Sequence record: MW812339.1
DNA: 64,000 nt
Reading direction: 5' to 3' (one strand)
Positions 1 through 51,105 of this stretch are shown in pieces; position 1 is the stretch's first letter; each line of letters begins with the position of its first letter. Both the position numbers and the translations under genes were made by a program. Under the pieces are notes generated by a model. That model did not search any database, was not told the origin of the DNA, and saw only the letters and a list, made by a program, of their open reading frames with translations.

Positions 1-309
1 AGTACCCAGATAAGCCAGGTCGTCGGAATCGCCGAGATAAATCTGGTCCACGCCACCAACACCACGACGGTTCTTAATCGTGATTTGTTTCTGCGGCCCT
101 ACAACGGTACGGCCCGTCACAGTGACCGAGAGCAAGTAATAGTAGGTCGTGTTGAGAATAACAGTGGCGTCTGTCCAGGAGTTCTCACCATTTGACAGCG
201 TTGCAATGGGTGCAGGTAACGCAGTCGGCACAAGTGCTTTGGTGTCCCGGTAAACATTGACCACAGAACCTGCTGGGTTTTGGTTATTCCAGCGTAGGGT
301 AAAGGCCAT
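1..309 (-). CDS. Tail-associated protein, partial (runs off left edge); paralog of 2756..3757
   Basis: Not in ORF track; manual translation from ATG at 309: MAFTLRWNNQNPAGSVVNVYRDTKALVPTALPAPIATLSNGENSWTD...RRGVGVDQIYLGDSDDLAYLG, aligns with N-terminus of 2756..3757; AGGAG RBS upstream. Confidence 0.9.
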   Translation of the reverse strand, partial: MAFTLRWNNQNPAGSVVNVYRDTKALVPTALPAPIATLSNGENSWTDATVILNTTYYYLLSVTVTGRTVVGPQKQITIKNRRGVGGVDQIYLGDSDDLAYLGT

Positions 310-3757: not shown

Positions 3758-3769
3758 GACGTCTTACCT

Positions 3770-5194
3770 CTATTTGAAACCGTTAAGTTCACCGTTGGTG
3801 GTGGAAAGGTTCGTTTTAGCAGGCGCGGTGTACGCCTCGGTCTTCACTGGTGCAGGCGTGTAGTCTAGCGTCTTCGGCAGACCCAAACTAACCGGGGCAA
3901 TCGCAAGCTGATTCTCCGTACGCGCAGGCGCTGGAGTAATATCTACCGTTCCCGGTAAGCCGAATACAGGCGGTGCCAACATCAGCAGGTTCTCAGTGCG
4001 CGTAACTGGCGCAGTCACCGTATAATCCATCCGCCCAATGATGTCCTGCAAAGCAATCGTGTTGGAAGAAGTATCCACTAACTCTACGACAGGCCACCAG
4101 TATTGGGTAGTGGCCGCCAATCCCTTCTGCACAGCATTCCAAATCGTAGAAGCCATCGTCGCCAAGCGGTGGTTAGTGGTGTTTGTCGACATGGTGTTTT
4201 GACAAACGATATACGCCGTCCATTCCCCACTCGTGTTGGATTCCCATTCGCCATTACGAACCTTGATCATCATCCCCAAAATACTACCAGCATATTGCGC
4301 AGCAGTAGGCGGTGATGTCGTCACTGTATCCGGATCGTTCATTGTTGACGTCGGCAATCGTGGACGTATGTAGAAACGGCCTTCCGGGGTTTGAATAGGT
4401 ATAATTTTCGACTGATTAACAGGACTGGCTACTGGATACGAATACTTTCCGTTGTTATCGGTTCCGTATGCCATGCCTGCCTGATAAATCATCTGCCAAC
4501 TGATATTTGAAGCGACGGGGCTGACTGGAATGTAAACCACACTGCCCTGGTAGTAGAATTTATACCACCCTTCATTTCCGCCAACGTATTGCGTATATCC
4601 AGTTAAACCGGTTGCAGTTACAAACGCCTGACGGGCTATAAATTCAGCAGCAGTTACCCGACCGAAGTAACCCATCAGCGTATCACCTGCCAGCAGGTAT
4701 TTTGGCCCAGGGCCAGAATTCGGATAATAACCAATTTGTTCCGTCTGGTACGAGAAATACAGCGAACCCGTAAATGCCGCGCAAGCAGCCGTCACATTAA
4801 GCTGTGCGTCTTGCTTAGTAGCATTAGGGTTAATAGCCGTAGTCAGGTTACTGACCTCGTCCGGACGGAGAGTGATCCCCAACGCGTCATTAATAATCGG
4901 TAAGGCATCGGCGATGCTTTTAATGTCTGACGAGAAATAGAGGACCGGTCGCAGTGAAGAACTCCAGAGATTACTCAGCAGCACACGGTCGTAGTTGAGC
5001 GTTAGCGTTCCGATTAACCCAGAGCCAGGATAGGCGGTAAACTTCACTTCAGTATTACGGCCGTTCGCGCTACGAGCGACGGGTCCGGAGGTTAGCGCCG
5101 TATTAGCCGGAGTCAACTTCACAGGTAGGTTCGGGTTATCCCGATTCACCTGGTCGTAGACGAGCTGCAGCGCTTCCTTGGAATAGAATTGCAT
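3770..5194 (-). CDS. Tail fibre/baseplate-associated virion protein
   Basis: 474 aa; paralog of 320..1795 (NSGPGPK.LLAGD..MGYFG; WWPVVELVD; ends GELNGFK). Confidence 0.75.
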   Translation of the reverse strand: MQFYSKEALQLVYDQVNRDNPNLPVKLTPANTALTSGPVARSANGRNTEVKFTAYPGSGLIGTLTLNYDRVLLSNLWSSSLRPVLYFSSDIKSIADALPIINDALGITLRPDEVSNLTTAINPNATKQDAQLNVTAACAAFTGSLYFSYQTEQIGYYPNSGPGPKYLLAGDTLMGYFGRVTAAEFIARQAFVTATGLTGYTQYVGGNEGWYKFYYQGSVVYIPVSPVASNISWQMIYQAGMAYGTDNNGKYSYPVASPVNQSKIIPIQTPEGRFYIRPRLPTSTMNDPDTVTTSPPTAAQYAGSILGMMIKVRNGEWESNTSGEWTAYIVCQNTMSTNTTNHRLATMASTIWNAVQKGLAATTQYWWPVVELVDTSSNTIALQDIIGRMDYTVTAPVTRTENLLMLAPPVFGLPGTVDITPAPARTENQLAIAPVSLGLPKTLDYTPAPVKTEAYTAPAKTNLSTTNGELNGFK

Positions 5195-5245: not shown

Positions 5246-6073
5246 TTAGCTGTTGTAGTGGTAATACGCCACACCTTTCACCCCAGCTTCATCGATGCCC
5301 GTTTGGATAACAACGCGGTCGTAATCCTTGTTGGCACTCGCTGCAGTTGTGGTGGCCACATCCTGAACGGTGTTACTGTTCAGTGGTGCGGAGTAAGGCG
5401 GAATACCCAGACTATCCAGCAGATTGCGCAGACCTTCCCATTGCGGCAAGCCTGCGGCCGTTACTGTCAGCAGGTTCTTGTACGCTGTGAAATCGATGCC
5501 GTAAGTCAGCATGTCGATACACTTCTGATTCAGCGCTGGGTCAACATTGTGCGTCAACGCAGGCACCGCATCTTTCGTGATAGACGTGTCGAGCACCGGA
5601 AGACCACGACTGTAACGGATAGTCACTGCCCCGCGATACGCAGGAGAAGTAGCCAGAGCCGACAAAGTCTGGGTGTTCGTGTAGTTAGGGCTACCGACAC
5701 CCGCTAACGAGTAGTTCTGCAAGTCCCACGTTGAGAAGTTAATCCCGTAGGTATCGAACAGCACCGGCAGTGCGGCATGAATATTACCTGCATCGAATGT
5801 CACAAACTGGCCTTGCACATTTGACCCATTCGGGAACAGAGTTGGCAAGTTAATGCGATCGTAGAACAGCGTAATCTGATCACGGAAACCAGCACCCTGT
5901 ACGCCACGCAGACGTACAGAAGTGTTACGGTTGCCACTGTTCGAGTTCACTGCCACGTTAGTGATTTTTTCGATGATGCAGTTATCCGCAGAAACCGGAA
6001 TCGGCAGATTAGGGTTATCGCGGTTAATCAGGTCAAAGACCAATACGTTCGAGGGTTTTCCGTAGATAAGCAT
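5246..6073 (-). CDS. Virion structural protein, tail paralog family
   Basis: 275 aa; 'LVFDLINRDN...FYDRINL' anchor domain; C-terminal 'TYGIDFT...GVAYYHYN'. Confidence 0.75.
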   Translation of the reverse strand: MLIYGKPSNVLVFDLINRDNPNLPIPVSADNCIIEKITNVAVNSNSGNRNTSVRLRGVQGAGFRDQITLFYDRINLPTLFPNGSNVQGQFVTFDAGNIHAALPVLFDTYGINFSTWDLQNYSLAGVGSPNYTNTQTLSALATSPAYRGAVTIRYSRGLPVLDTSITKDAVPALTHNVDPALNQKCIDMLTYGIDFTAYKNLLTVTAAGLPQWEGLRNLLDSLGIPPYSAPLNSNTVQDVATTTAASANKDYDRVVIQTGIDEAGVKGVAYYHYNS

Positions 6074-6075
6074 CG

Positions 6076-6963
6076 TTACACCTCGTTCGGATCGTCAAGG
6101 TCGTTGAACTGCAGGTACATGGTACCTTTGAACGACGTGTTGGTAGCCGGGAGTTTCAACGCCACTACGTATTTGTACTTCGCGTTGGTCGGCATCGCGA
6201 CAGGGTTGTTCAGACCGACGCTGAGCACCTCTGCACCTGCCAGACCCCATGAGGCGTTGGTGGTTGCCAGCCAAGACCCACCTGAGATATCTTTCAGGAT
6301 ATTGACCATATCCGTCAACGGCTGACCGGTAAGCACGCCCGGAGTAAACGCCAACATCTGGTCATGGTACTTGGTGAAGTTGAACGGATAGCTGTACACC
6401 TCAGCGATAGTACCGGAGACAGTCTCGGAACCCATCTGGCCATTCGGGTATTTCAGACCCGCCAGGACGCTGTTGGAAACAGTAGACACCAGAGATTCAT
6501 CGCCTTTCACGACTTTGAAGTTGTACTGGTCAATCCAGCCCAGAGACGTAGTCTTCGCTTTCACCACAACGGTACCGGCAGTTTTGTCGGTGTTCCAGAG
6601 GATGTCTGCCTCTTCCAGGTCATCGGTAGTGAACACGAAGCCGTAGCGCTGGTTCAGACCAGTGAGAGCCTGAGAGAGTTTGGCGTTTGATGGACCAATT
6701 GCGAGCGTGTCGCCAATCAGCATAACGATGTCTTGCACCTTCAGACGGTTGTAATAGATGTTCTTCTTACCTGACCAGGTAGAACCAGCTACACCGTCCG
6801 CCGTGATTTTAACCTGAGTGTTCTTCTCAGTCGTGTTACCTTTGTCAGTACCACGAATGTCCTTCGGCGCGCTCCAGACGAAATCAGTCGCCTTGATGCT
6901 TAGCGAGTTTGCGTTATTGATCGCACTCAGCAGCACGTCTTTAGCAGGAATATAGATTGCCAT
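6076..6963 (-). CDS. Virion structural protein, tail paralog family
   Basis: Start moved to MAIYIPAK (ATG 6963); 'LLSAINNAN...YYNRLKV'; 'YSYPFNFT...GTMYLQFN'. Confidence 0.75.
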   Translation of the reverse strand: MAIYIPAKDVLLSAINNANSLSIKATDFVWSAPKDIRGTDKGNTTEKNTQVKITADGVAGSTWSGKKNIYYNRLKVQDIVMLIGDTLAIGPSNAKLSQALTGLNQRYGFVFTTDDLEEADILWNTDKTAGTVVVKAKTTSLGWIDQYNFKVVKGDESLVSTVSNSVLAGLKYPNGQMGSETVSGTIAEVYSYPFNFTKYHDQMLAFTPGVLTGQPLTDMVNILKDISGGSWLATTNASWGLAGAEVLSVGLNNPVAMPTNAKYKYVVALKLPATNTSFKGTMYLQFNDLDDPNEV

Positions 6964-6973
6964 TCGCTTTTTC

Positions 6974-7822
6974 CTAGTTGTTGTAGTGCAGCAGCAAATC
7001 GCCACCAACATGAGTGTCTTTGATGTTGTAGATCAACAGTGCGTTGTCATACATCGTGTTCATGCGGTCGTCTCCTGGCGCTGTACCAGTTTTCAAACGC
7101 ACAACAGAAGACCCCGTTGGATCGAACGTCGGAATGCCGTACGCCGTTAACGTTTCCATCAGGCTCGTAGTAAAGCCCTGGTCGAAGTTGTAACCTACGT
7201 CCAGACGACCGTTCTTAAACGCCGCCATCAGCTGAGGCTCATCAGTAAAATCGGAACCGTAAGCCAGCATCGTGAGACACTTTTTAGGCAACTCACCACC
7301 TGGATAAGGATGCTCTAATACCAGCAGGATATCGTTTACCACCTGGTCTTCAAAGCTGTTCTTACCTTTGACGGACATGAAGGAAACAGACCCGGTATAT
7401 TGAATGCAGCTTGCCAGCACACTCACGGTATTCTTGAGGTTCAGGTAAACGTACACATCCGGAATATCTTCCGGCACCAGGTTCAAGCCATAACGTCCAT
7501 TCAGGTTCTGAACAAACGCGGTTTTCTTCGAGGTCGCATTCAACCAACCGTATGCGTTAGGCGACGTCACCTGTGGCGTCATGTTCTTGAATAAGTCGTT
7601 CAGCGACAAGCGTTTGTAACGGAACGTCTGCGCCCCGATGTAGCCACGACCTTGACGTCCACGAATGGTAATCTCGGTATTGGCTCCGCTCGCTGTCGGT
7701 GTGATTGCCCGTGGAACACCAATGTTGGCATTATCCAAACCCATGGGCATGATGGCACCGGGAGTCTCGGCGTTAATCGCATCGTACAGGAATTGTCGCT
7801 GAGACAGACTATATAAAGCCAT
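6974..7822 (-). CDS. Virion structural protein, tail paralog family
   Basis: Start moved to MALYSLSQ; 'LYDAINAE...YKRLSL'; 'AYGSDFT...GDLLLHYN'. Confidence 0.75.
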   Translation of the reverse strand: MALYSLSQRQFLYDAINAETPGAIMPMGLDNANIGVPRAITPTASGANTEITIRGRQGRGYIGAQTFRYKRLSLNDLFKNMTPQVTSPNAYGWLNATSKKTAFVQNLNGRYGLNLVPEDIPDVYVYLNLKNTVSVLASCIQYTGSVSFMSVKGKNSFEDQVVNDILLVLEHPYPGGELPKKCLTMLAYGSDFTDEPQLMAAFKNGRLDVGYNFDQGFTTSLMETLTAYGIPTFDPTGSSVVRLKTGTAPGDDRMNTMYDNALLIYNIKDTHVGGDLLLHYNN

Positions 7823-7838
7823 AATAGCCTCCTCGGCC

Positions 7839-7882
7839 AAAAAAGAAAGGAGAAGCTGAGAGGAGGATTTCCCCCTCCCAGC
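7839..7882 (-). terminator. Intrinsic terminator
   Basis: Minus strand GCTGGGAGGGGG-AAAT-CCTCCTCTCAGC followed by TTCTCCTTTCTTTTTT. Confidence 0.65.
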
Positions 7883-7891
7883 GAGGCCTTA

Positions 7892-8803
7892 TTAGGCGTT
7901 ATAGTGCAGGAACAGAACACCTGTGAAGTTAGAGCACAGGGTATCAGACAACTCCAGTTTCAGGATGCTGTTGTACTCAGTGTTCGCGCCTTCAACCGGT
8001 TTCTTCGGCTCATCACCAGTAGCGGTACCGTCGTCGGTAGTAGAACCAACATACAGCACGTTTGCGCCGTGCAGGTTGTAGTCTGCAGCATCAGTGCTGT
8101 CGACCCACAGCTCTGGAACGACTTTGTTCAGCTCAGTTGGGAACGCAGAGTCTTCTGCGATAACGCCTTCTGCCTGCACTTTCAGGAACGGAGCAATTGC
8201 GGTGCAATCTACGCCGTAGGAGTAGATGTACGCCTGACCTTTCGCTGCATCCGGACCATCCGGGTAAACCAGACCGTCAAGTTTGGTTTCAGTAACCACC
8301 AGGCTCAGACGTTCACCAACCTGTGGTTTCGCACCGATTTTAACCGGGATAGCGCCCAGGTAAGCATAGCAACCATCGTTAAAGGTAATAACGTGGTCAA
8401 CTGGAGCCGGGTCTGGATCGTCTGGGTTGGTCAGTGGTGGGTTGGTGTTATCAGGGATAACCGCCGGCGTGATGTCGTCTACGGTGATACCCAGGCCGTA
8501 CTGTTTGTTCAGAGTGGCCAGCAGGTCGGTAGAGGTTTTCGGCAGCTTAACATCGAGATACGCAGTCACGTTACGGAACAGCGCAGCACCTTCCAGACGG
8601 TCATAAGTGACGTCCTGAGTACCGATGTAACCTGAGTTCTTCTTCGCCGTCAGACGCATACCGGTGTTGCGGTCTGCACCTTCGTCGGTAATAGGAGTTG
8701 GATCGCCCAGAGTAACCATGGACAGTTCCAGTTCAGCCTGTGGGTTCTTCTCGTTGATGAAGTCAAGAACCAGCAGGTCAGACGTTTTGTTTAAAGGTTT
8801 CAT
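7892..8803 (-). CDS. Virion structural protein, tail paralog family
   Basis: 303 aa; 'LVLDFINEKN...YDRLEG'; 'KLDGLVYP..GQAYIYSYGVD'; 'GVLFLHYN'. Confidence 0.75.
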   Translation of the reverse strand: MKPLNKTSDLLVLDFINEKNPQAELELSMVTLGDPTPITDEGADRNTGMRLTAKKNSGYIGTQDVTYDRLEGAALFRNVTAYLDVKLPKTSTDLLATLNKQYGLGITVDDITPAVIPDNTNPPLTNPDDPDPAPVDHVITFNDGCYAYLGAIPVKIGAKPQVGERLSLVVTETKLDGLVYPDGPDAAKGQAYIYSYGVDCTAIAPFLKVQAEGVIAEDSAFPTELNKVVPELWVDSTDAADYNLHGANVLYVGSTTDDGTATGDEPKKPVEGANTEYNSILKLELSDTLCSNFTGVLFLHYNA

Positions 8804-8824
8804 TCTTACTTCCTTTACTCAGGA

Positions 8825-9670
8825 TTAATCAGGGTCGTTGTAATGGAGATACAGACGCCCGCCAAGGTTCAGACAGTACAACGACAGTTCCACGATGAGA
8901 ACGTTATCGACTGACGGATTGGTTGGGAGACTTGCACTGTTGCGCCCGTTGTAAACGACTATCGCCTCTTTGAGGTTATAGTCCACCGGGTTACGGTAGG
9001 TCAGCCAGCCATCGCCGGTAACCGTTTTGAGAATCTGCGCTAAGCGTTCTGGGGTGATAGTGGTACCTAAGCGCTGGAACTCTGCCGCGTAATCGTCGAA
9101 ACGCCACGGATACGAATATATCGCACCCTGACCGACTTTGGTGTTGAAGTACGGATATGCGTACGGTGTCACTGTTAACGGGTCAAAGTTCGACGGCAGT
9201 AAAGCATCGCCCGGTAACAGCTGCACTTCTTGTTGCCCAATCCAACCTAACGAGGTCGGAGTAGCAACCAACTGCACAACCCAGGTCGTCCGGTCGATTT
9301 CGGTATTCTCGACATCTTCCGGTTTCAGACTCAGGCCGTAATACTGGTTAATCAAACTGACGATGTCGTGAGCCCATGAGACGCTCTCTAAGAGCGCGGG
9401 GACACGCAAGGGTTGTAATCCATCGAGGTCAGTAAACATCTCTGAGAAGTCCACACGGTCGTAATAAACGGTGGTGGCTCCAATAGCGTTCGCCGTAGCG
9501 AGTGCCTGGATACGCACCATCGAATTGTGACCGTTAGCTTTCGCTAAGTCTTCGTCGGAGGTAGGAACCGCTGGGACACCGAACACCACCTCGTCGACTT
9601 TCAAGTCCAGATGGTTTTCTGTGTTAATCTCAGCGATAAGGATTTGTTCAGCAGTGGCTAAAAGTGGCAT
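8825..9670 (-). CDS. Virion structural protein, tail paralog family
   Basis: Start moved to MPLLATAEQ (ATG 9670); 'ILIAEINTEN...YYDRVDF'; 'GRLYLHYN'. Confidence 0.75.
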   Translation of the reverse strand: MPLLATAEQILIAEINTENHLDLKVDEVVFGVPAVPTSDEDLAKANGHNSMVRIQALATANAIGATTVYYDRVDFSEMFTDLDGLQPLRVPALLESVSWAHDIVSLINQYYGLSLKPEDVENTEIDRTTWVVQLVATPTSLGWIGQQEVQLLPGDALLPSNFDPLTVTPYAYPYFNTKVGQGAIYSYPWRFDDYAAEFQRLGTTITPERLAQILKTVTGDGWLTYRNPVDYNLKEAIVVYNGRNSASLPTNPSVDNVLIVELSLYCLNLGGRLYLHYNDPD

Positions 9671-9680
9671 GTCAGAATCC

Positions 9681-10523
9681 TTACTTCGGCTGATAGTGAA
9701 GGATGAGATTACCCGCGTAGTTGCTTGTGGTAGCCAACTTGATAATCGCCACGCGATTGTAATCCGGGTCGTACGCATCCCCAGGAGTGACCGCAGTCGT
9801 TCCCATGTAGCGTGCGCCCGACAACGCAATCTGACCCGTTTGAGCATTTGCACCCGTAACGAATGCAAACTTCAACGGCACCACTTCATTCAGCAAGTCC
9901 ACATCAGCGGCTGTTAACGCACGGTTGTACGCCCAGTCCGTGGTAAACTGCTGTTGCATCTCTGTCCAGTCGTAACCGTAGGCTACGTACTCGGCTTGCG
10001 GTTTATCTGCGACCACAAACGGCGCAATAATCGCACTGAGGTCAACGTCAGTAACTACATCAGCCAAGTTCGGGAAGAACTTCGCATAGCGTAGACGGAA
10101 ACCACCTTGCCAGGCCAAGCAACCCGGTTTGATAGCAATGTCTAACAACCAGCTCTCACCTAAGTCTTTCACCGACTGGTCGACAATGTCGTCCGCGATT
10201 AAGGACAGGCCGTATTTCTTGTTCAGGAACGGTAACAGCTGGGATACGTTCTGTACCGGGTCAGCAATCACCACCGGAATCGCGTTTCGGAATAGAATCT
10301 CCATTTCGATACGGTCGTACTCGATAGTGACGTTACCTTTATACCCTTTCCCGTTCAACCCGTATAACAGTACACGCGTATTCCGGTCAGCGCCCGGTGT
10401 CAGGACTTGCTCAGGATAACCCGAAGCAACCTGTTCCCAAGTGAGGGGATTGGCGGTCAAGCCATTTTGCCTGTTGATGGCCTCTAACAACATCTCTTTC
10501 GAGGGCTTATCGTAAATAGACAC
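9681..10523 (-). CDS. Virion structural protein, tail paralog family
   Basis: 280 aa; 'MLLEAINRQN...YDRIEM'; 'AYGYDWT...GNLILHY'. Confidence 0.75.
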   Translation of the reverse strand: MSIYDKPSKEMLLEAINRQNGLTANPLTWEQVASGYPEQVLTPGADRNTRVLLYGLNGKGYKGNVTIEYDRIEMEILFRNAIPVVIADPVQNVSQLLPFLNKKYGLSLIADDIVDQSVKDLGESWLLDIAIKPGCLAWQGGFRLRYAKFFPNLADVVTDVDLSAIIAPFVVADKPQAEYVAYGYDWTEMQQQFTTDWAYNRALTAADVDLLNEVVPLKFAFVTGANAQTGQIALSGARYMGTTAVTPGDAYDPDYNRVAIIKLATTSNYAGNLILHYQPK

Positions 10524-10533
10524 CTAGACCCTC

Positions 10534-11331
10534 CTAGTTGTTAAAGTGTAAGTTGAGGTTACCCTGGAAGTTAGTGCATTTGTCTGTCAGTGCAACCGAC
10601 ACGACTTTTGCAAACTCCGTATTTGCGCCCACAAGGTCTGCTGGAACACCGTCGAAGACGACAGTTGCACCACGCAAGTTATACGGGGCCGGGGTGTCTT
10701 GTGCCACCCAGACTTCAGGAACCACTTTGTTGAGTTCAACCGCTAACGCCGTGTCATCCACTTCGATACCGACCGCTAAGAGGCTCAGGAAACGAGAGAT
10801 GTGGCTGCAGTCAATGTCCCGCGAATAGATATACGCTTGACCCAACTGAGTGTCTTGATGATCAGGGTACAGAAGACCGTTCAACTCTGTATTGGTTACT
10901 ACTTCTGCCAGAGGTGTTGAGTGCTTCAGTTCGATAACTGCTTCACTTCGCCACTCGTGGGAAAGGGAAACAGCTACAACCGTGTGCGTCTGACCTTCTA
11001 CCGGATTATCTTCTAAATCCTCCGGTAAAATGTTCAGTTCGAAGCGTTCGTTAATCGCAGTGAGTAAGTCGTGCGTGGTGTGCACATCCTCGTCACCGAA
11101 GACATTATTGCCTACGAGGTAATCCTCTAATGGGCGACGATGGTAGTCAACAGTTACCTGTGAACCTTCATCGCCTCGCATTTTTGAGGTGAGGACAACT
11201 TCCGAATCCCGACCGTCTACTGACACAACCTCCGGCAGTCCGATATCAACATCGTCAAAGGTAAGCGGTGGGCTTATCTTATTCTCTTCGTTGATGAGTT
11301 TTAGCAGATTCTGTTTTGAAGTAAAAGACAT
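10534..11331 (-). CDS. Virion structural protein, tail paralog family
   Basis: Start moved to MSFTSKQN; 'LLKLINEEN...YHRRPL'; 'ELNGLLYP..GQAYIYS'; close to 7892..8803. Confidence 0.75.
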   Translation of the reverse strand: MSFTSKQNLLKLINEENKISPPLTFDDVDIGLPEVVSVDGRDSEVVLTSKMRGDEGSQVTVDYHRRPLEDYLVGNNVFGDEDVHTTHDLLTAINERFELNILPEDLEDNPVEGQTHTVVAVSLSHEWRSEAVIELKHSTPLAEVVTNTELNGLLYPDHQDTQLGQAYIYSRDIDCSHISRFLSLLAVGIEVDDTALAVELNKVVPEVWVAQDTPAPYNLRGATVVFDGVPADLVGANTEFAKVVSVALTDKCTNFQGNLNLHFNN

Positions 11332-11450
11332 CGCGTTAACTCGTTGTAAAGGGATTATCGAGGCCGTAATGTAACGACCCCCTGCCAGCATAATAAAGGC
11401 TGAGCCTGTTCAGGAGTCGACTGTCGAGGACAAAAAAATAAAGGGCAAAC

Positions 11451-16587: not shown

Positions 16588-17115
16588 TCAGTTCCCCTGT
16601 CGCTTGATGTAAACTACGTTGATGTTTTCATAGCGGGCACACGTCCATGTCAGTTCCCAGTAATGGCGTCGGTTATCCGCAATCTTCATGTCGATGTCAA
16701 GAATGGCATCATGCTTCACTTGACTCAACACGCTAACGATACTTGCCAACTCGCTGTGTGGGCGGTCAACAATCGTTTCCAGATAACTGTCCAGACGAGC
16801 CGGGGTGGCTACGGTACGGATATGTGTTTTGGTATCATCGGAACCGTAATAGAGGTAGAACGGAGTGCGGGGAACGTACCAACGCCAGATGCCCATATAC
16901 GGCGCATTCTGATAGGCAGACAATTCCTTGATTGCATTCAAAACCGCCGAGCAGCGGAAATACCAAACGTCCCATTCGTCTTGAGGGAAGAGTTCGGCAA
17001 CTTTGACCTTGAGTGGGTCAATGTTAATGTCCCCTGCGGCCAAGACTTCCGGGGTAACGCCGGCTTCCAGAATGTTGCGTTCCCGTTTGGTGTACAGGTT
17101 CATTGTAATATTCAC
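16588..17115 (-). CDS. Hypothetical protein
   Basis: 175 aa; TAAGGAG RBS before GTG. Confidence 0.75.
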   Translation of the reverse strand: MNITMNLYTKRERNILEAGVTPEVLAAGDINIDPLKVKVAELFPQDEWDVWYFRCSAVLNAIKELSAYQNAPYMGIWRWYVPRTPFYLYYGSDDTKTHIRTVATPARLDSYLETIVDRPHSELASIVSVLSQVKHDAILDIDMKIADNRRHYWELTWTCARYENINVVYIKRQGN

Positions 17116-17155
17116 TTAATACTCCTTAAGGTTAATCGTTTATATCTGTTCTAAA

Positions 17156-17491
17156 TCATCCACGGTGGCTAAAGATGGCACCAGGGCCTGGCAATGGACT
17201 ACGGTCAAGTTCTTCCATCTTTAAAGACAGACGATTAACCTTCTCCGCATTACGGTCGTTAGGCTCACGACGTAACTCACCTAACGCGACAGCGAACTGA
17301 GTAGAGAGAATGCGGCTGCCGTAGAAGCCCCGCCTGTTAATTGGTAACGGTTCAAAGCGAGCGTCGAAGTTGTTAGTGTTGTTCAACGCATTTACGAATT
17401 CCATAATTCCTTGTTGCATCCGGATTTCGGATTCGCCTTCCATGTCGGTTGCTGTCTGGATTACAGCTACCTGGTAGACTTTCTGAGTCAT
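17156..17491 (-). CDS. Hypothetical protein
   Basis: 111 aa; TAAGGAG RBS; first gene after promoter motif. Confidence 0.75.
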   Translation of the reverse strand: MTQKVYQVAVIQTATDMEGESEIRMQQGIMEFVNALNNTNNFDARFEPLPINRRGFYGSRILSTQFAVALGELRREPNDRNAEKVNRLSLKMEELDRSPLPGPGAIFSHRG

Positions 17492-17550
17492 CTTTAATAC
17501 TCCTTAGCATATAGACATAAGCACTGTTGCTAACGTAAAAACTGAGAGAT

Positions 17551-17574
17551 TCACGTAGATAAAATCTATCTGAA
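17551..17574 (-). promoter_or_regulatory. Putative early promoter
   Basis: Minus strand TTCAGATAGATTTTATCTACGTGA, just downstream of a terminator. Confidence 0.55.
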
Positions 17575-17592
17575 TTCGAATGGAATCCATCG

Positions 17593-17630
17593 CAAAGAAA
17601 AAAAAAAAGAAAGAGCCCCGAAGGGCTCTT
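17593..17630 (-). terminator. Intrinsic terminator
   Basis: AAGAGCCC-TTCG-GGGCTCTT with very long U tract on minus strand. Confidence 0.85.
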
Positions 17631-17633
17631 GTC

Positions 17634-20600
17634 TTACGACACAAATCCGTTCAACGTGGTCTTATCCAGTTCACTGACGTCTCTGGTGAGTTTGTCATCC
17701 GGTAACACGTAAGTGATATCCAGTGACGCTACGGCGTGATCAGGAACCGCCAAGTCGTGATAGAAATCGTAACCTGTCCCATGTTGTTTATAGAGCAAGT
17801 ACAAACCCATCGCACGCATCGCCTCCCCGGTGTAGAACCCAAACGCTTGACCGTTGTCAGTCGTTGGATTCGCCCAAGGCGACCACGCCCCATTGATGGC
17901 TTTACCCGGAATGTCAGTAACGGTGAAGTTATCCCCCATTTCCTTCATTCCCTTATCCATAATCCTGTCCAGTCCCTCAACCGTACACCCAGCCATTGCA
18001 GCATAGCAGCTACCGGCAATCCACAGAGCACACATGTGAGCCGTGAAATCGTTCTCCACCCAAACCGGTTTATTCGGTTTCGTTGGGAACTCATTCGGTG
18101 TGTGATTGTCGAACTTATCCAGGAACTGAACCAACCAAACGGCCCAAGTCTCAACATACGTTTTCAACTTGTCGGGCACTGGCTTGCCACGAACGACCAG
18201 CTCGTACCAACATCGTGCAGCAGCGTTATACGCACGACACTGATAACCTGCCCACGGATGGCCGTCTCCCCAGTGGAACGTTGTCCAGGTGTCTGGGTCG
18301 CCGTAGGAGTAGTTATCCCAGCGGTTCCAGACGTAAGCAGCACAACCCGGACCCAACTCACCGATTTGCGCGTTGTACGCAATCTGCGAATCGTACATAA
18401 ACGTAATCTGGTTATCGAACCAATCTGCGAACCGGTCATCTTTGTGGATGGTGTACATAAACGGATACTGATAACCCGGATACGGCATCCCGTGCCATGC
18501 GCCCAACTGCGCAGTACCCTCTGAATAGATGTTCGAGAACGGTATCGTCCCCGGACAGTACGCCAGAGAATCCAGACGGTAATCTTTCACCGTGCAATCA
18601 CCGACTAAGCCGGTATACGCAGAACTACCACGGATAACGATACGGAAGGTTAATGTCCAACCATCGTCTTTATCGAACACCGGAGGAATGTCATTCACGC
18701 AGTAGTACGAGAAATGCGCATTGTCCACCGTTGAGTCAGGCAGAATTGTAACCTGGTCGATAGTGTCGTAGTTCGGTGCAGACGGTTCTGGGTCAGTGTC
18801 TTCATGGTCTGGCTGATATCCAGACAACGTCGCTTTCGCTGGGTCGATGATAACCTGAGCCCACGCTCCATTCGTTGCCGGTAACATCCACCACCAACGC
18901 CACTTATCAGTGTCCTCAAAACGGAAGTTAAAATCAGCATCCGCTTTATAGACAATCGACTGAGGTTTTGCGACACCTGCATCGGTTAACCAGAAACCGA
19001 TAATGAAACCAGCGTCGTCATCCGGGAACAGAGCTTCCACGATTGTACCGGAACGTCCATCGTAAATGTTCTGTTCGAACTTCTCAGCCCAGGTACAACC
19101 GCCATAGTCCGAACATGCGCGCGCATCCGCGATGATATAATCATCGTTCGTGGCTGGGTTCGTGATTCTTGCCAGTGAGTTGAAGTCGATGTCGTACTGT
19201 TCCACCGCCATCGCACTGGAGCCCGGCAACGTACAACCGTACCAGTTCACTTCCTGGGTATCCGCTTTCACCGGGTTGATGTCAACCATCACCTTACATG
19301 CCAGCGCATCCCCGTTATCGCATACCCCACCGTAAGTCACCCTCAGGCGAGAATCGGTGTTGATGCGGAAACGGATAGCTTGCTGTTCCATGAAGTGTTG
19401 CAAGGCTTCGGCTGATTTGAACACGATGTCCCCATCCGCGTTACGACTGTAGGCAACGGTCCCAGTAGAAGGGTAGTTGTAGTCATACGAGATACCATCC
19501 GTAAACGGCGTCTCAGCGAGTTTAGAGCGACGGAAGAATTTATCCGTAGCATCGATGTAGGTGTATTCGTGCGCGGTGTAGAATACGCAATCCAGCGCTT
19601 TCTTGTAACGGTCTTCCCCAGTGATGCGCCACAACAGATAGCAACAATCGATGAACCACACTTCCGCATCAGCCGCGTTACCCATCTGGTTCACAGAACC
19701 TTTGAACGGTGTGTGTACCGGACGGTTATGCCATGCTTCGTTACGAGCGAACTGGTAGCCGCCTTGTGCAACAGGCACTTGTGATGCGTAGTTAATCAGA
19801 TAGACGCCATTAATGGTCTTGTCTTTTAACTGCACGGTACCTTTATCGGCCGTACCAAACCCCGTTCCGACAATCTCCCCGTCCTGAATCTTGTTACCCG
19901 TCCAGGTGATAATCCAGTCCGGTTCGTACAACGTGCCCTTGCTTGCAGAACCTCCCCAGACCGGCGTATAACCAGAAGGGTCGCCGAGCATGGTATTCCA
20001 GTCCACCCACGCTTTAACATCGTACGGTTCCGCGGGATTGGTAATCAGGAACTGTGGCACCTTAGACCAATCGATTTTTCCATCGAGGTCTTCTTGAATC
20101 TTCTGAACGTCCGCGTTCACAGCACCCCAGGTAGGATGGCCGCGGTGCGCAGAGAAGAAACTGTTCAGGTATTCACCAAAGAATGGGGCACCCTGTGGGA
20201 TTTTAGCCAGGCCGTTAGTGAACGTTACGGGTACGCATTTGTAACCGCCGTGGGTAGGCTCCGTTGGATGTACTGGATAATCTGCCAGCACCGGTTCCTT
20301 CCCGTTCACAAGCCAGTTACAAATCCAACGTCCGGCTTCTTCTGGAATTGGCTGATTAGCGTAGAAGTACGTAACGTACGCCTCCCACGCTTTCACTGCT
20401 GCATCCAACCACATCTGGTGTTTAGTGGCGATGTACATGTGGCAGTAACCGATAACCAACAGAGACTGACCTTCTGTGGTCGCATCCCCATTCGGTTGAT
20501 ATTCAGCCATCGTGTCCGCAATAAAGTGACGGTTGTTCGACAATACCCCTTCTGGGTTAATCAGATAGTGGTCATTGTGAGCATCGTTGGTCTGCCCGGT

Positions 20601-20690
20601 ATTTCGACGCACAAAATCCTGATGACCATAAGCCAACTGCATCGCGTAGTTTAATGCGTGACGTCCTGCGGCTATTTTAAATCTGCTCAT
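17634..20690 (-). CDS. Large virion-associated (tail fibre/spike-like) protein with GH8-like glycoside hydrolase motifs
   Basis: 1018 aa; DATTEGQSL and GNAADAEVWF resemble GH8/BcsZ TTSEGQSY and SASDGDVWM; Trp/aromatic-rich; ends TTLNGFVS. Confidence 0.7.
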   Translation of the reverse strand: MSRFKIAAGRHALNYAMQLAYGHQDFVRRNTGQTNDAHNDHYLINPEGVLSNNRHFIADTMAEYQPNGDATTEGQSLLVIGYCHMYIATKHQMWLDAAVKAWEAYVTYFYANQPIPEEAGRWICNWLVNGKEPVLADYPVHPTEPTHGGYKCVPVTFTNGLAKIPQGAPFFGEYLNSFFSAHRGHPTWGAVNADVQKIQEDLDGKIDWSKVPQFLITNPAEPYDVKAWVDWNTMLGDPSGYTPVWGGSASKGTLYEPDWIITWTGNKIQDGEIVGTGFGTADKGTVQLKDKTINGVYLINYASQVPVAQGGYQFARNEAWHNRPVHTPFKGSVNQMGNAADAEVWFIDCCYLLWRITGEDRYKKALDCVFYTAHEYTYIDATDKFFRRSKLAETPFTDGISYDYNYPSTGTVAYSRNADGDIVFKSAEALQHFMEQQAIRFRINTDSRLRVTYGGVCDNGDALACKVMVDINPVKADTQEVNWYGCTLPGSSAMAVEQYDIDFNSLARITNPATNDDYIIADARACSDYGGCTWAEKFEQNIYDGRSGTIVEALFPDDDAGFIIGFWLTDAGVAKPQSIVYKADADFNFRFEDTDKWRWWWMLPATNGAWAQVIIDPAKATLSGYQPDHEDTDPEPSAPNYDTIDQVTILPDSTVDNAHFSYYCVNDIPPVFDKDDGWTLTFRIVIRGSSAYTGLVGDCTVKDYRLDSLAYCPGTIPFSNIYSEGTAQLGAWHGMPYPGYQYPFMYTIHKDDRFADWFDNQITFMYDSQIAYNAQIGELGPGCAAYVWNRWDNYSYGDPDTWTTFHWGDGHPWAGYQCRAYNAAARCWYELVVRGKPVPDKLKTYVETWAVWLVQFLDKFDNHTPNEFPTKPNKPVWVENDFTAHMCALWIAGSCYAAMAGCTVEGLDRIMDKGMKEMGDNFTVTDIPGKAINGAWSPWANPTTDNGQAFGFYTGEAMRAMGLYLLYKQHGTGYDFYHDLAVPDHAVASLDITYVLPDDKLTRDVSELDKTTLNGFVS

Positions 20691-20693
20691 GGT

Positions 20694-21170
20694 TTAGTAC
20701 CCTTGTACGCGAATGGCTCCCCGCCAGTGACCACCGCCGTCTGTTGACATCAAGACAATAATGTCTTCTGCACCTGCGGTGTACGATAAGACCGGAACTG
20801 CACCATTAGGCCAGGCAACATTAGCAGGCCAGATGACCTTGTTAGCACCCGACCCCTGGACGAAACTCAGTTGAATCTCATAACGGATATTCAGCAACGG
20901 ATTTTCAATATCCACGAGCGTTATCGTGGTGGACGGATCGTTCAATGTGATGATGAAGTCATCGGATACGTTGGGGTCGACGCGTACCGCGCCCTGAGCC
21001 ACAAACAGAGACTGATAAGGTTTGGTCTCCGAACCTCCACCTAGTTCGCTCAATGGAATCTGGAATTCGTTCTCCCCGTCAGTAACCAGTGCGGCAGATG
21101 CCGCCGCTGTCTTGTCACCGATAAAGGCGGGAAGTTGGTGCAATCGTTTCTTTTTGACTGGAGTTGCCAT
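20694..21170 (-). CDS. Tail-fibre-associated small beta-domain protein
   Basis: 158 aa; 'FVQGSGANKVIWPANVAWPNGAVPVLS..AGAEDII.LMSTDGG..W.G' pattern typical of phage tail-fibre distal modules. Confidence 0.6.
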   Translation of the reverse strand: MATPVKKKRLHQLPAFIGDKTAAASAALVTDGENEFQIPLSELGGGSETKPYQSLFVAQGAVRVDPNVSDDFIITLNDPSTTITLVDIENPLLNIRYEIQLSFVQGSGANKVIWPANVAWPNGAVPVLSYTAGAEDIIVLMSTDGGGHWRGAIRVQGY

Positions 21171-21712
21171 TATGCGTCCTCTTCAATCCCGTAAGTCAAT
21201 ACAGCGTCATCGCCGATGCATAAAACAGTGTCGCCATCTGAGACACCCGCGGCATATTCGAGCTTACCGAACAGCGTAGCACCGAACGTTCCCAACCACG
21301 CTGGTGAGGAATCGTCAATCGTTAAAACCACGGCGTCATCAGTGATAACGATAGGAGCGTCTACGATGTCGTCGGCTGTTAAGTTCGTTCCGCAGTAGTC
21401 GTTCACCACAGCAACCAATTCGCGGGTCTGTTGGGCGTCTTCTACGGATATAAGCAACGGTTGGTTTGCATCGAGGATAACGCTTGCAGATAAACGGTCG
21501 TAATAGATGACGACCTGCTTACCATTAGGCTTACGGGCCTTCGCTACCGATGCTTGCGTATTGCGCGGAATAATTTCCGCGTCTTGATTTGCACCTACCT
21601 CGGTAATCACTAACTCGCTTGGCATCAACGTCATATTGTTATCGTTGTTGATAAGAGCCACGACGAGTGACTTAGCGTCAAGTGTGAGGTCGGGCTGATA
21701 GCGTTCTGCCAT
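21170..21712 (-). CDS. Tail paralog-family anchor protein
   Basis: Start moved to MAERYQPD; 'LVVALINNDN...YYDRLSA...VNDYCGTNL..DDI..W.G' anchor domain. Confidence 0.7.
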   Translation of the reverse strand: MAERYQPDLTLDAKSLVVALINNDNNMTLMPSELVITEVGANQDAEIIPRNTQASVAKARKPNGKQVVIYYDRLSASVILDANQPLLISVEDAQQTRELVAVVNDYCGTNLTADDIVDAPIVITDDAVVLTIDDSSPAWLGTFGATLFGKLEYAAGVSDGDTVLCIGDDAVLTYGIEEDA

Positions 21713-21728
21713 TGATGCCTCCGGAGAA

Positions 21729-21770
21729 ATAAAAAAAATAAAGCTACCACACATATGATCGTGTGGTAGC
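21729..21770 (-). terminator. Intrinsic terminator
   Basis: GCTACCACAC/GTGTGGTAGC 10-bp stem with U tract on minus strand. Confidence 0.8.
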
Positions 21771-21776
21771 CATTTC

Positions 21777-21986
21777 TTATTTCAACTTCGCGATAACAAA
21801 GATGATGGCGAGGATGCAGACAACTATCTTTATCATTGCGTTGCTTTCTTCTTTTTCATACTTCCCGCTACCGTACGGGTTCTTACCGAACGTTGCGTTG
21901 AAGTTGCGGCAGCGCTTCCAGTAAAAGAACGTACGTGCCAGCACGAAGAAAGAAACCAGACCAACGGCAATCCAGAAAATGTTCAA
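21777..21986 (-). CDS. Small membrane protein (2 TM)
   Basis: 69 aa; two hydrophobic segments; AGGAG RBS. Confidence 0.65.
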   Translation of the reverse strand: MNIFWIAVGLVSFFVLARTFFYWKRCRNFNATFGKNPYGSGKYEKEESNAMIKIVVCILAIIFVIAKLK

Positions 21987-21995
21987 AAATGACTC

Positions 21996-22394
21996 CTATT
22001 GTAAGGTTTGGTGTGGGGGATAAAAGATAGCCTTTTCTGGATGTTGTGGCATCCGCGCTTTGCAGGATTCGAGTATCCCATCGAGTCCACGCATCACATA
22101 GTCAGGCAAGCCCATATCGACGAAGACCATTTCGGGTAACGCATCACGGAAAACCTGGCAGCAACGTTCGAGGTATTCGGTCATCGCTTCTTGTTCATCC
22201 GCGAACATGGCGTGGAATAACGCCGCCCGATACGCTTCAGCGACAAAGGCGAATTCAACGAACTTGTCATAGTCGCATTCTTCGACCTCCACGTTTAAAC
22301 GTTGAGCCACTGATTTAACGGTTGTGCGAAGTGCGTGGATTTCTTGCACTTCGGCGAAGTTGTTACGACGTGGGGCAGGCATTAACAGTTTCAT
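21996..22394 (-). CDS. Hypothetical protein
   Basis: Start moved to MKLLMPAP with AAGGAG RBS. Confidence 0.7.
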   Translation of the reverse strand: MKLLMPAPRRNNFAEVQEIHALRTTVKSVAQRLNVEVEECDYDKFVEFAFVAEAYRAALFHAMFADEQEAMTEYLERCCQVFRDALPEMVFVDMGLPDYVMRGLDGILESCKARMPQHPEKAIFYPPHQTLQ

Positions 22395-22407
22395 TAGAAA
22401 ATACTCC

Positions 22408-22779
22408 TTACGATAATTCACCCATGTAGATAACTTCATAGCCGAACCATTCGCCGATTTCGATAAGGTACTTCACCAGCAGATGCCGATGACAGAACTT
22501 CCCTTCTGGGCAGTAGCACATCAGTACCACTTCTTCGTTGCGAAGAATCTCTATCAGCTTGTCGGTGTCTTCATCGAACAAACGGTTCAGCTTTTGCATG
22601 TATCGGACGGTATACGCCGCTTCTGCTTCGGGACCCTTGTCAGACTTTTTGTAGTCCATCAAGAAGTCCCAGTCCGGGGCCAGATACTTCAGCCCCGATT
22701 TTACTGTGATGTCTAGCTTCGGTAGGCTACGCTTTTCAGCTACCCGCCACTTCGCCAGCTGGAGTGTCCATAGTCGCAC
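22408..22779 (-). CDS. DUF488-like protein
   Basis: 'LDITVKSG...LAPDWDFL...VVLMCYCPEGKFCHRHLL'; probable GTG start at 22779 (MRLWTLQLAKWR). Confidence 0.65.
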   Translation of the reverse strand: MRLWTLQLAKWRVAEKRSLPKLDITVKSGLKYLAPDWDFLMDYKKSDKGPEAEAAYTVRYMQKLNRLFDEDTDKLIEILRNEEVVLMCYCPEGKFCHRHLLVKYLIEIGEWFGYEVIYMGELS

Positions 22780-40408: not shown

Positions 40409-40418
40409 CTGTGACTCC

Positions 40419-51094: not shown

Positions 51095-51105
51095 CGGAGA
51101 CCCCA

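What the first reader, a model, noticed from the sequence alone, without database searches (positions are those of the whole stretch)
17634..20690. 1018-aa virion-type protein carrying split GH8 (BcsZ/cellulase-like) catalytic motifs
Seen: DATTEGQSL (nt ~20460-20486) and GNAADAEVWF.....LW..TG..RY (nt ~19620-19685). Established: GH8 enzymes such as BcsZ use TTSEGQSY (catalytic Glu) and SASDGDVWMA..L.EA..LW..Y. Here the two motifs are about 260 aa apart instead of about 60, and a further large beta-rich region follows, implying an (alpha/alpha)6 barrel interrupted by big inserted, possibly carbohydrate-binding, domains. The C-terminal LNGF motif is shared with the tail proteins. Inference: a virion-mounted endoglucanase/depolymerase for cellulose-like biofilm matrix or exopolysaccharide, unlike the usual beta-helix tailspikes.
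Basis: partly seen in the sequence, partly recalled or inferred. Interest (0 to 1): 0.75.

Follow-up and report, generated by a model that had tools for sequence, protein, structure and literature searches.

The report
Phage tail glycosidase with split barrel
This gene of an Erwinia amylovora jumbo phage encodes a tail protein whose sugar-cutting-enzyme fold (an alpha/alpha-6 barrel, most like bacterial cellulases) is split by two large inserted beta domains; it belongs to a widespread, already noticed but uncharacterised family of phage tail "glycosidases".

Summary
The window is bases 1-64000 of Erwinia phage pEa_SNUABM_29, a Seoulvirus (SPN3US-like) jumbo phage. The 1018-aa ORF at 17634-20690 (-) is real.

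- **Virion location.** It is the ortholog of SPN3US gp124. That protein was found by mass spectrometry in virions and is absent from tailless particles.
- **Fold.** AlphaFold2 (pLDDT 87) gives an (alpha/alpha)6 barrel in three segments (residues 1-140, 313-380, 705-975), split by two beta-rich inserts. Natural relatives without the inserts exist, and their model matches GH8, GH126, GH48 and GH76 enzymes and AGE epimerases at Foldseek probability 1.0. A GH8 endoglucanase is the top hit.
- **Motifs.** They line up in register with Glu55 and Asp116 of E. coli BcsZ, but only as short motifs. Pfam GH8 does not match, HMM-HMM probability is at most 4%, and no equivalent of the GH8 base was found.
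- **Earlier annotation.** The family (PHROG 2871; phi92 gp141, already listed as "glycosidase") occurs in 528 phage records, always behind a small adaptor gene.
- **Cellulose link.** Erwinia phage M7, reported to depend on cellulose, carries a 55-67% identical ortholog and no other recognisable cellulase.

GH8 membership and the substrate are unproven. This is a new member of a known kind.

The parts
17634..20690 (-). Gene pEaSNUABM29_00026, 1018 aa: tail-associated (alpha/alpha)6 glycosidase-like protein, ortholog of SPN3US gp124 and phi92 gp141 (PHROG 2871)
20271..20690 (-). Barrel segment 1, residues 1-140 (helices 2-29, 72-89, 92-109). Retained in insert-free relatives.
20463..20480 (-). 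Motif TTEGQS, residues 71-76, with near-invariant E73 at the N-terminus of helix 72-89. In register with BcsZ Glu55; candidate general acid.
19755..20270 (-). Insert 1, residues 141-312, beta-rich. Absent from the minimal relatives P0197, P0265 and P0241. M7 gp042 has a further insertion of about 150 aa here.
19551..19754 (-). Barrel segment 2, residues 313-380 (helices 340-357, 360-376)
19656..19676 (-). Motif AADAEVW, residues 339-345, with near-invariant D341 and W345 at the N-terminus of helix 340-357. In register with BcsZ Asp116.
18579..19550 (-). Insert 2, residues 381-704: several beta-sandwich domains
18678..19202 (-). Mobile beta-sandwich module, residues 497-671 (phrog_23426). A copy at 48% identity sits in the tail fibre gp040 of Erwinia phage M7. 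Candidate carbohydrate-binding module.
17766..18578 (-). Barrel segment 3, residues 705-975 (helices 755-776, 815-833, 840-859, 884-900, 907-920, 951-970). Carries near-invariant Y740, Q741, Q769, D792, W813, R819, H885 and E956.
17637..17684 (-). C-terminal extension of 16 residues (1003-1018) holding LNGF. Absent from all relatives; pLDDT below 50.
17611..17630 (-). Intrinsic-terminator-like hairpin plus T-run directly after the stop codon
20694..21170 (-). Upstream gene, 158 aa (phrog_9017 'tail fiber protein'; SPN3US gp123; phi92 gp140). Proposed adaptor: its C-terminal domain of about 90 aa is conserved directly upstream of family members in five different phage types.
21170..21712 (-). 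First gene of the three-gene unit, 180 aa (phrog_2935; SPN3US gp122). It is the N-terminal domain type of the virion paralog family.
21742..21771 (-). Terminator-like hairpin upstream of the three-gene unit

Best explanation
The gene encodes a virion-borne, tail-periphery enzyme of the six-hairpin (alpha/alpha)6 glycosidase superfamily. Shown: one barrel is built from three sequence segments, with two nested beta-rich insertions. Inferred: at least one insertion looks like a carbohydrate-binding module. Inferred: the protein has no trimeric fibre shaft of its own and is docked to the tail by the small protein encoded just upstream, whose conserved C-terminal domain travels with this family across myo-, sipho- and podophages. 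Inferred: on contact with the host it binds and cleaves a conserved beta-linked envelope or biofilm glycan, most plausibly bacterial cellulose in Erwinia amylovora. In this model E73 acts as general acid and D341 holds the sugar at subsite -1, as Glu55 and Asp116 do in the GH8 cellulase BcsZ. The base would come from the C-terminal barrel segment (D792, E956 and D767 are candidates). It works like a clan GH-M (GH8/GH48-type) cellulase but is too divergent to be filed in GH8.
For: Identity and location: the window is pEa_SNUABM_29. PHROG 2871 'tail protein' matches at E=0. SPN3US gp124 is present in tailed particles and absent from tailless ones.

Fold: AF2 pLDDT 87.3, pTM 0.84, with 11-12 long helices in three blocks. 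Natural relatives of 504-537 aa contain only the three helical blocks. Their model (pLDDT 87.7) hits GH8 4q2b (E 4.7e-7), GH126 3ren, GH48, BcsZ 3qxf, GH76 and cellobiose 2-epimerases, all at probability 1.0. The full-length model hits CBM11 at probability 1.0 and GH116 at 0.95-0.98. Weak Pfam hits in family members go only to (alpha/alpha) barrel families and CBM_11.

Active-site candidates: E73 and D341 are both present in 180 of 184 relatives. Other near-invariant polar residues sit at the N-termini of the putative inner helices. The best HMM-HMM local matches to BcsZ put E73 on Glu55 and D341 on Asp116; the roles of those BcsZ residues come from PMC8805304.

Module: the adaptor domain is conserved upstream in Seoulvirus, phi92-like, Kolesnikvirus, T7-like and sipho-like contexts. 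Terminator-like hairpins bracket the three-gene unit.

Substrate hints: E. amylovora phage M7 is reported as cellulose dependent (PMC13101476). It carries a 55-67% identical ortholog with both motifs and no tblastn-detectable GH5, GH48 or GH8. Phage S6 of the same host needs cellulose and carries GH48 and GH5 enzymes.
Against: - No curated family model matches: Pfam, NCBIfam and PDB sequence searches are all empty.
- HMM-HMM probability against a narrow GH8 profile is 0.8-3.9%, and against a GH48 sequence below 1%.
- No counterpart of the GH8 base Asp243/Arg246 was found.
- Foldseek scores do not separate hydrolases from AGE-type epimerases.
- The spatial closeness of E73 and D341 was not measured.
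- The insert-free relatives lack both E73 and D341, so the scaffold can exist without them.
- Family members are carried by phages that plate on E. coli K-12. In rV5/phi92-like phages, infection depends on ECA or NGR through a different fibre protein, so cellulose cannot be an obligatory receptor for the whole family.
- No activity has been shown for any member in what I could read.
Confidence: 0.6

Rival explanations
1. It is a non-catalytic receptor-binding or lectin protein. The glycosidase-like barrel and the CBM-like inserts only bind a surface glycan, and the conserved acidic residues serve binding rather than cleavage.
For: No sequence model of any GH family matches. Minimal relatives keep the barrel but lack E73 and D341. 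No general base was identified. The closest folds include non-hydrolytic epimerases.
Against: E73, D341, Q741, Q769, R819 and E956 are near-invariant across 180-230 relatives spanning less than 30% identity. The motif around E73 copies the GH8 acid motif. Such conservation of carboxylates at helix N-termini is typical of active sites.
Confidence: 0.15
2. It is an active carbohydrate enzyme of the six-hairpin superfamily but with different chemistry or a different target from a GH8-type cellulase. Examples: a GH76-like or GH116-like retaining glycosidase, a polysaccharide lyase, or an epimerase-like modifier. The target could be LPS core, ECA, NGR, PNAG or amylovoran.
For: Foldseek gives GH76, GH116, GH105 and AGE epimerases at the same probability as GH8 and GH48. 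Weak Pfam hits go to GH47, GH76 and C5-epimerase. The family is conserved in phages of many gammaproteobacteria, and in phages that use ECA or NGR.
Against: The family has no conserved adjacent Asp-Asp pair of the kind mutated in the GH76 entries among the Foldseek hits. The only in-register motif matches are to GH8. The top PDB hit is a GH8 endoglucanase. A cellulose-dependent Erwinia phage carries an ortholog and no other cellulase.
Confidence: 0.2
3. It is mainly a structural scaffold or arm of the tail fibre apparatus, whose enzyme-like fold is vestigial. Its high conservation would reflect contacts with the baseplate and other fibres.
For: It is conserved while neighbouring distal fibre genes vary in rV5/phi92-like phages. 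In phi92 the L-shaped fibre I needs an unidentified arm, and fibre II is unassigned.
Against: In Seoulvirus the gene stands apart from baseplate genes, with only its adaptor. Conservation is concentrated in polar residues at the putative catalytic face rather than on the surface. In T7-like and sipho-like contexts it is the terminal gene of the fibre module.
Confidence: 0.05

Closest known systems
SPN3US gp124 / phi92 gp141 / BASEL 'lateral tail fiber protein with several glycosidase domains' (PHROG 2871)
   Same: Full-length orthologs at 83% (SPN3US-like) and 41% (phi92-like) identity. Same small upstream adaptor gene. Tail location shown for SPN3US gp124. phi92 gp141 is listed as 'Glycosidase'.
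   Different: Nothing essential differs. This copy has a unique 16-residue C-terminal extension. In what I could read, none of these has a solved structure, a defined fold assignment or a known substrate.
GH8 endo-beta-1,4-glucanases such as E. coli BcsZ (PDB 3qxf) and P. putida BcsZ (4q2b)
   Same: (alpha/alpha)6 barrel. Best Foldseek hit of the insert-free relative. The motif around the acid Glu55 and the motif around Asp116 recur in register and in the same order.
   Different: No Pfam GH8 match. HMM-HMM similarity is not significant. No Asp243/Arg246 equivalent was found. Two large insertions put the motifs 268 residues apart instead of 61. The protein is virion-borne rather than periplasmic.
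GH48 cellulases, including gp094 of the cellulose-dependent Erwinia phage S6
   Same: Same barrel class (Foldseek TM about 0.53-0.55 normalised to the query). Same host species. Phage-encoded. A weak collinear alignment of the C-terminal half shares GYQ and WAG[YF]Q motifs.
   Different: S6 gp094 is a clear GH48 (Pfam E 1.5e-198) and the window protein is not. The acid motif differs. HMM-HMM probability is below 1%.
Beta-helix tailspike depolymerases (e.g. Erwinia phage L1 DpoL1, P22 gp9)
   Same: Virion-mounted polysaccharide-directed proteins used at adsorption.
   Different: No beta-helix and no evident trimeric shaft. The catalytic scaffold is alpha-helical.

Membership tests
GH8 (Pfam PF01270 Glyco_hydro_8) | Matches the family's sequence model | tested here: not met
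   No Pfam hit at E<=1 for the protein or for any of 43 relatives. All listed BcsZ relatives carry PF01270.
GH8 | (alpha/alpha)6 barrel fold | tested here: met
   AF2 models. Foldseek probability 1.0 to GH8 4q2b, 3qxf, 6to0 and other six-hairpin enzymes.
GH8 | General-acid Glu in the conserved motif (BcsZ Glu55) | tested here: inconclusive
   The best local HMM-HMM match puts E73 on Glu55 (8 columns, 63% identity, Prob 0.8%; extended N-segment P 0.011). E73 is present in 189 of 194 relatives. No structural superposition was available.
GH8 | Conserved Asp at subsite -1 (BcsZ Asp116) | tested here: inconclusive
   D341 falls on Asp116 through the P0197 alignment (Prob 1.4%). They share the pattern A.D..VW. 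D341 is present in 212 of 215 relatives.
GH8 | General base Asp with nearby Arg (BcsZ Asp243/Arg246) | tested here: inconclusive
   No alignment of the C-terminal barrel segment to that region. D767, D792 and E956 are only candidates.
GH8 | Significant profile-profile similarity | tested here: not met
   hhalign Prob 0.8-3.9% against a BcsZ-type profile (Neff 2.5, a narrow profile).
GH8 | Inverting hydrolysis of a beta-1,4-glycan | not testable with these tools
   No biochemical data were found for any family member.
GH48 (Pfam PF02011) | Sequence model match, or profile similarity to a true GH48 | tested here: not met
   No Pfam hit. hhalign against S6 gp094 gives Prob 0.3-0.9%.
Six-hairpin (alpha/alpha)6 glycosidase superfamily | Barrel of six inner and six outer helices, with conserved polar residues at the inner-helix N-termini | tested here: met
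   The face-clustering itself is inferred, not measured.
PHROG 2871 / SPN3US gp124 / phi92 gp141 tail protein family | Full-length homology | tested here: met
   PHROG E=0 over residues 1-1006. 267 homologs were found, 372 clusters at 50% identity and 528 phage records.
PHROG 2871 / SPN3US gp124 / phi92 gp141 tail protein family | Tail-associated virion protein | not tested
   Shown for the SPN3US ortholog only. No proteome of pEa_SNUABM_29 is available.
PHROG 2871 / SPN3US gp124 / phi92 gp141 tail protein family | Small adaptor gene directly upstream | tested here: met
CBM11-type carbohydrate-binding module | Beta-sandwich fold and family sequence model | tested here: inconclusive
   Foldseek probability 1.0 but TM only 0.43-0.45 to 6r31 and 1v0a, and the aligned region is not reported. 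Pfam CBM_11 hits 1 of 43 relatives at E 0.0014.
Beta-helix tailspike depolymerases | Right-handed parallel beta-helix | tested here: not met
   The secondary structure and the Foldseek hits show none.

The most novel reading that the evidence does not exclude
This protein family is an undescribed glycoside hydrolase family of clan GH-M type (related to GH8/GH48), with nested CBM insertions. It is mounted through a portable adaptor on the tails of hundreds of unrelated phages, and it targets bacterial (phosphoethanolamine-)cellulose or another conserved beta-glucan. That would make biofilm cellulose a widespread, overlooked first receptor or barrier for phages of Enterobacterales and other gammaproteobacteria.
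Probability: 0.3. Interest if true: 0.7.

Novelty: new member of a known kind. Interest (0 to 1): 0.5.

Why it matters
Characterised phage depolymerases are mostly beta-helix tailspikes aimed at variable capsules and O-antigens. This is instead a highly conserved, alpha-helical, cellulase-like tail enzyme family with no entry in Pfam or NCBIfam and no solved structure. It is present in 528 of about 50,700 phage records, in phages of very different morphology.

If its target is a conserved glycan such as cellulose, three things follow. It would explain why the gene is conserved where other fibre genes vary. It would give a molecular candidate for the cellulose dependence reported for Erwinia phage M7. 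It would also define a new carbohydrate-active enzyme family.

For the window itself the result is mainly a better annotation of a 'hypothetical protein' and its two upstream partners.

Tried and rejected
- Direct sequence searches (Pfam, NCBIfam, PDB phmmer and a profile search) gave nothing usable.
- Foldseek with the full-length model was dominated by jelly-roll noise because the barrel is split. This was solved by modelling a natural insert-free relative.
- A homolog search with that relative found only three proteins.
- HMM-HMM comparison with a BcsZ profile and with a true GH48 (S6 gp094) was not significant. The GH8 profile was narrow because only the 120 best hits, all at least 61% identical, are returned.
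- A 6-of-7 identity between the window's D341 motif and a stretch of S6 gp094 was not chosen by hhalign. I treat it as unproven.
- LNGF as a functional tag shared with tail proteins is rejected for this protein, because it lies in a lineage-specific extension.
- The papers of Schwarzer 2012 and Knecht 2022 are not held. Their content is cited only through PMC5380687, PMC9544554 and PMC13101476.
- No model coordinates are exposed, so distances between residues could not be measured.

Every comparison rests on the BcsZ sequence fetched with tools. The route was a primer printed in PMC6712877, then, giving L008.
Full report
**What the window is.** The finding's ORF matches Erwinia phage pEa_SNUABM_29 (MW812339.1) at 100% identity and at the same coordinates, 17634-20690, so the window is bases 1-64000 of that record. 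This is a 248.8-kb Seoulvirus, that is an SPN3US-like jumbo phage of Erwinia amylovora. Nearly all genes run on the minus strand. The neighbourhood holds the major head protein, internal head proteins and a large array of virion paralogs.

**Checking the observation.**
- The ORF is exact: 17634-20690 (-), 1018 codons. It is annotated only as 'hypothetical protein'.
- DATTEGQSL is residues 69-77, nt 20460-20486, as stated.
- The second quoted motif was not in the window as typed. The stated place does hold AADAEVW (residues 339-345, nt 19656-19676).
- The spacing from E73 to D341 is 268 residues.
- Patterns built from these two motifs and the tool-fetched BcsZ each occur once in the six-frame translation of the whole window, both in this ORF.
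- In an alignment of 43 relatives down to 44% identity, D69, E73, Q75, N338, A339, D341, E343 and W345 are invariant.
- Among 265 fetched family proteins, E73 and D341 occur together in 180 of the 184 that cover both sites.

The motifs are therefore real and under strong constraint.

**Virion location.** PHROG 2871 ('tail protein') matches residues 1-1006 at E=0. The SPN3US ortholog is SPN3US_0124, 'tail-associated protein'. In Table S4 of Thomas et al. 2016 (PMC5105663), gp124 (113.7 kDa) gave 79, 72 and 64 spectra in three tailed preparations and none in the tailless 64(am27) particles. The small neighbour gp123 (16.5 kDa) gave 5 spectra. A tail location is thus shown for the ortholog and inferred here.

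**Fold.** AlphaFold2 with the 43-sequence alignment gave pLDDT 87.3 and pTM 0.84.
- Long helices fall in three blocks: 2-29, 72-89 and 92-109; then 340-357 and 360-376; then 755-776, 815-833, 840-859, 884-900, 907-920 and 951-970.
- The blocks are separated by beta-rich regions at about 141-312 and 381-704.
- Foldseek with the whole model was noisy. It did give GH116 beta-glucosidases at probability 0.95-0.98, CBM11 at 1.0 and the GH48 enzyme Cel48F at 1.0.

The decisive step came from the exhaustive representative search, which found 372 clusters. It revealed natural relatives of 504-537 aa (P0197, P0265, P0241) that match only profile positions 6-135, 308-371 and 701-958. These are the three helical blocks, contiguous, with both inserts absent. 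This shows that the helical blocks form one domain and that the beta regions are insertions.

The model of P0197 (pLDDT 87.7, pTM 0.88, twelve helices) matched only (alpha/alpha)6 barrels, all at probability 1.0:
- GH8 endoglucanase 4q2b (E 4.7e-7, best hit);
- GH126 3ren (TM 0.73);
- GH76 enzymes;
- GH48 CelS and Cel48F (TM 0.53-0.55 on the query);
- BcsZ 3qxf;
- cellobiose 2-epimerases and GH105.

Weak Pfam hits among relatives go to GH47, GH76, C5-epimerase and CBM_11 only, never to GH8.

**Testing GH8 membership with a real comparator.**
- I obtained E. coli bcsZ through a primer printed in PMC6712877 (L008:1498-2604:-).
- I confirmed residues E55, D116, D243 and R246. Their roles (acid, subsite -1 Asp, base, Arg) are described in PMC8805304.
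- HMM-HMM comparison of the family with a BcsZ-type profile is not significant: Prob 0.8-3.9%, with a best P of 0.011 for the N-terminal segment.
Window 70-77 falls on BcsZ 52-59 (E73 on Glu55, five of the six core residues identical). Through P0197, window D341 falls on Asp116, with A.D..VW shared.
- No counterpart of the base Asp243/Arg246 was found.
- A true GH48 from Erwinia phage S6 (gp094, Pfam E 1.5e-198) is likewise not significantly similar. Its C-terminal half aligns collinearly over 204 columns (P 0.06) and shares GYQ and WAG[YF]Q. Its acid motif differs from the window's.

My reading is that the protein works like a clan GH-M enzyme and is probably a very distant relative. It fails the sequence-model tests and cannot be filed as GH8.

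**Where the conserved residues sit.**

| Conserved residues | Position in the model |
|---|---|
| E73 | start of helix 72-89 |
| D341, W345 | start of helix 340-357 |
| Y740, Q741 | before helix 743 |
| D792 | helix 791-796 |
| W813, Y816, R819 | start of helix 815-833 |
| H885 | start of helix 884-900 |
| E956 | early in helix 951-970 |

In six-hairpin enzymes the N-termini of the inner helices form the catalytic face (established knowledge), so a single shared site is likely. I could not measure distances, because no coordinates are exposed.

**The gene module.** Terminator-like hairpins at 21771-21742 and 17630-17611 bracket three genes:
- 21170-21712 (phrog_2935; SPN3US gp122);
- 20694-21170 (158 aa; phrog_9017 'tail fiber protein'; SPN3US gp123);
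- the 1018-aa gene, which starts 3 nt after the previous stop.

The last 90 or so residues of the 158-aa protein are conserved in the protein encoded directly upstream of a family member in five contexts:

| Phage context | Size of upstream protein |
|---|---|
| SPN3US | 156 aa |
| phi92-like JohannJBalmer | 157 aa |
| Kolesnikvirus M7 | 244 aa |
| T7-like Aeromonas phage | 283 aa (domain at its C-terminus) |
| Siphophage-like contig with the minimal barrel | 205 aa |

I infer a portable adaptor. A variable N-terminus would fit the virion, and a constant C-terminal domain would hold the enzyme.

**Distribution and prior knowledge.** tblastn finds the family in 528 phage records. These include Seoulvirus, Kolesnikvirus, rV5/phi92-like phages, 52-kb siphophages, PBECO4, Goslar, N4-like GAP52, Vibrio phages and T7-like Aeromonas phages. 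Prior annotation exists:
- The BASEL annotation reads 'lateral tail fiber protein with several glycosidase domains'.
- Proteus phage 7 has 'glycosyl hydrolase'.
- phi92 gp141 is the ortholog and is listed as 'Glycosidase' after Schwarzer 2012.
- Maffei 2021 noted that such conserved glycan-hydrolysing fibre genes probably target conserved glycans.
- The 2026 phi92 cryo-EM study did not place gp141.

The kind is therefore known. The fold assignment, the split-barrel architecture, the insert-free relatives and the adaptor module are, as far as I could read, undescribed.

**Substrate.**
- Identity follows phage lineage rather than host: 83% to Salmonella SPN3US-likes but 55% to same-host Kolesnikvirus. 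This argues for a conserved target.
- E. amylovora phage S6 needs bacterial cellulose and carries GH48 and GH5 enzymes (PMC9544554).
- PMC13101476 states that Kolesnikvirus M7 is also cellulose dependent.
- M7 gp042 is 55-67% identical to the window protein over its whole length and keeps both motifs.
- M7 gp040 carries a copy of the window's residue 498-670 beta-sandwich (48% identity).
- M7 has no tblastn-detectable GH5, GH48 or GH8.

Together with the cellulase-like fold and the CBM11-like insert, this makes cellulose the leading candidate, at roughly 0.4 probability. It is circumstantial. Carriers that infect E. coli K-12, or that use ECA or NGR, show that cellulose cannot be obligatory family-wide.

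**LNGF.** The motif ends three ORFs. In the two phrog_3589 paralogs it is part of a conserved C-terminus, NGEL[ND]GF plus one residue, also present in SPN3US. In the 1018-aa protein it lies in a 16-residue extension that relatives at 92-93% identity lack, modelled at pLDDT below 50. DNA similarity of the three 3' ends is limited to the motif codons. I leave it unexplained.

**Verdict.** It is suggestive but unproven on GH8-type catalysis, and circumstantially supported on cellulose. The LNGF link to tail proteins does not hold. The gene is a new member of a known but uncharacterised family. Interest 0.5.

Noticed in passing
window 320-1795, 3770-5194 (-); L009:119-1531 and 3488-4984: Two large virion paralogs (phrog_3589) end in a conserved C-terminal motif, NGEL[ND]GF plus one residue, in both pEa_SNUABM_29 and SPN3US. 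Its function is unknown. The 1018-aa protein carries a similar LNGF only in a lineage-specific 16-residue extension.
   Followed up: partly
window 5246-11391 (-): Seven tandem paralogs of about 275-303 aa (the one scanned, 5246-6073, is phrog_1037), most ending in an LHYN-like C-terminus. The scanned one shares its N-terminal domain type with the phrog_3589 proteins and with the 180-aa product of 21170-21712. This corresponds to SPN3US 'paralog family B', described as head proteins (PMC5694885).
   Followed up: partly
window 17000-22500: No sigma-70-like promoter sites at all (0 found against 6.8 +/- 2.6 in shuffles), while terminator-like hairpins are frequent. This is consistent with transcription by the phage's own RNA polymerases.
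   Followed up: no
window 18678-19202 (-); L012:31137-31643: The beta-sandwich module at residues 497-671 is mobile. A copy at 48% identity sits in the C-terminal part of tail fibre gp040 of Erwinia phage M7 (phrog_23426), next to M7's own family member.
   Followed up: partly
L012:32503-35976 (M7 gp042) against window residues 205-211: The Kolesnikvirus orthologs carry an extra insertion of about 150 residues inside insert 1, so this loop of the barrel is a hot spot for nested domain insertion. Other relatives (P0013, P0020 and others, about 1690 aa) add C-terminal Big_2 domains.
   Followed up: no
L005:10001-11539 (P0197): Insert-free 512-aa relatives of the family lack both E73 and D341. 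They sit after the lysis cassette of a siphophage-like contig, followed by a 1325-aa protein. This may be a non-catalytic or differently catalytic branch.
   Followed up: partly
window 39278-41408 (-): Two adjacent paralogous internal head proteins (phrog_2497).
   Followed up: no
window 48914-53883: A 925-aa virion structural protein gene (phrog_3004) is the only long plus-strand gene in the window. It starts at the same base (51106) where the longest reading of the divergent minus-strand 730-aa ORF begins.
   Followed up: no
one search hit list: Several records of 135-146 kb named 'Campylobacter phage' (e.g. MG065639) are 97.6% identical in this gene to phi92-like coliphages, which suggests mislabelled hosts.
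   Followed up: no
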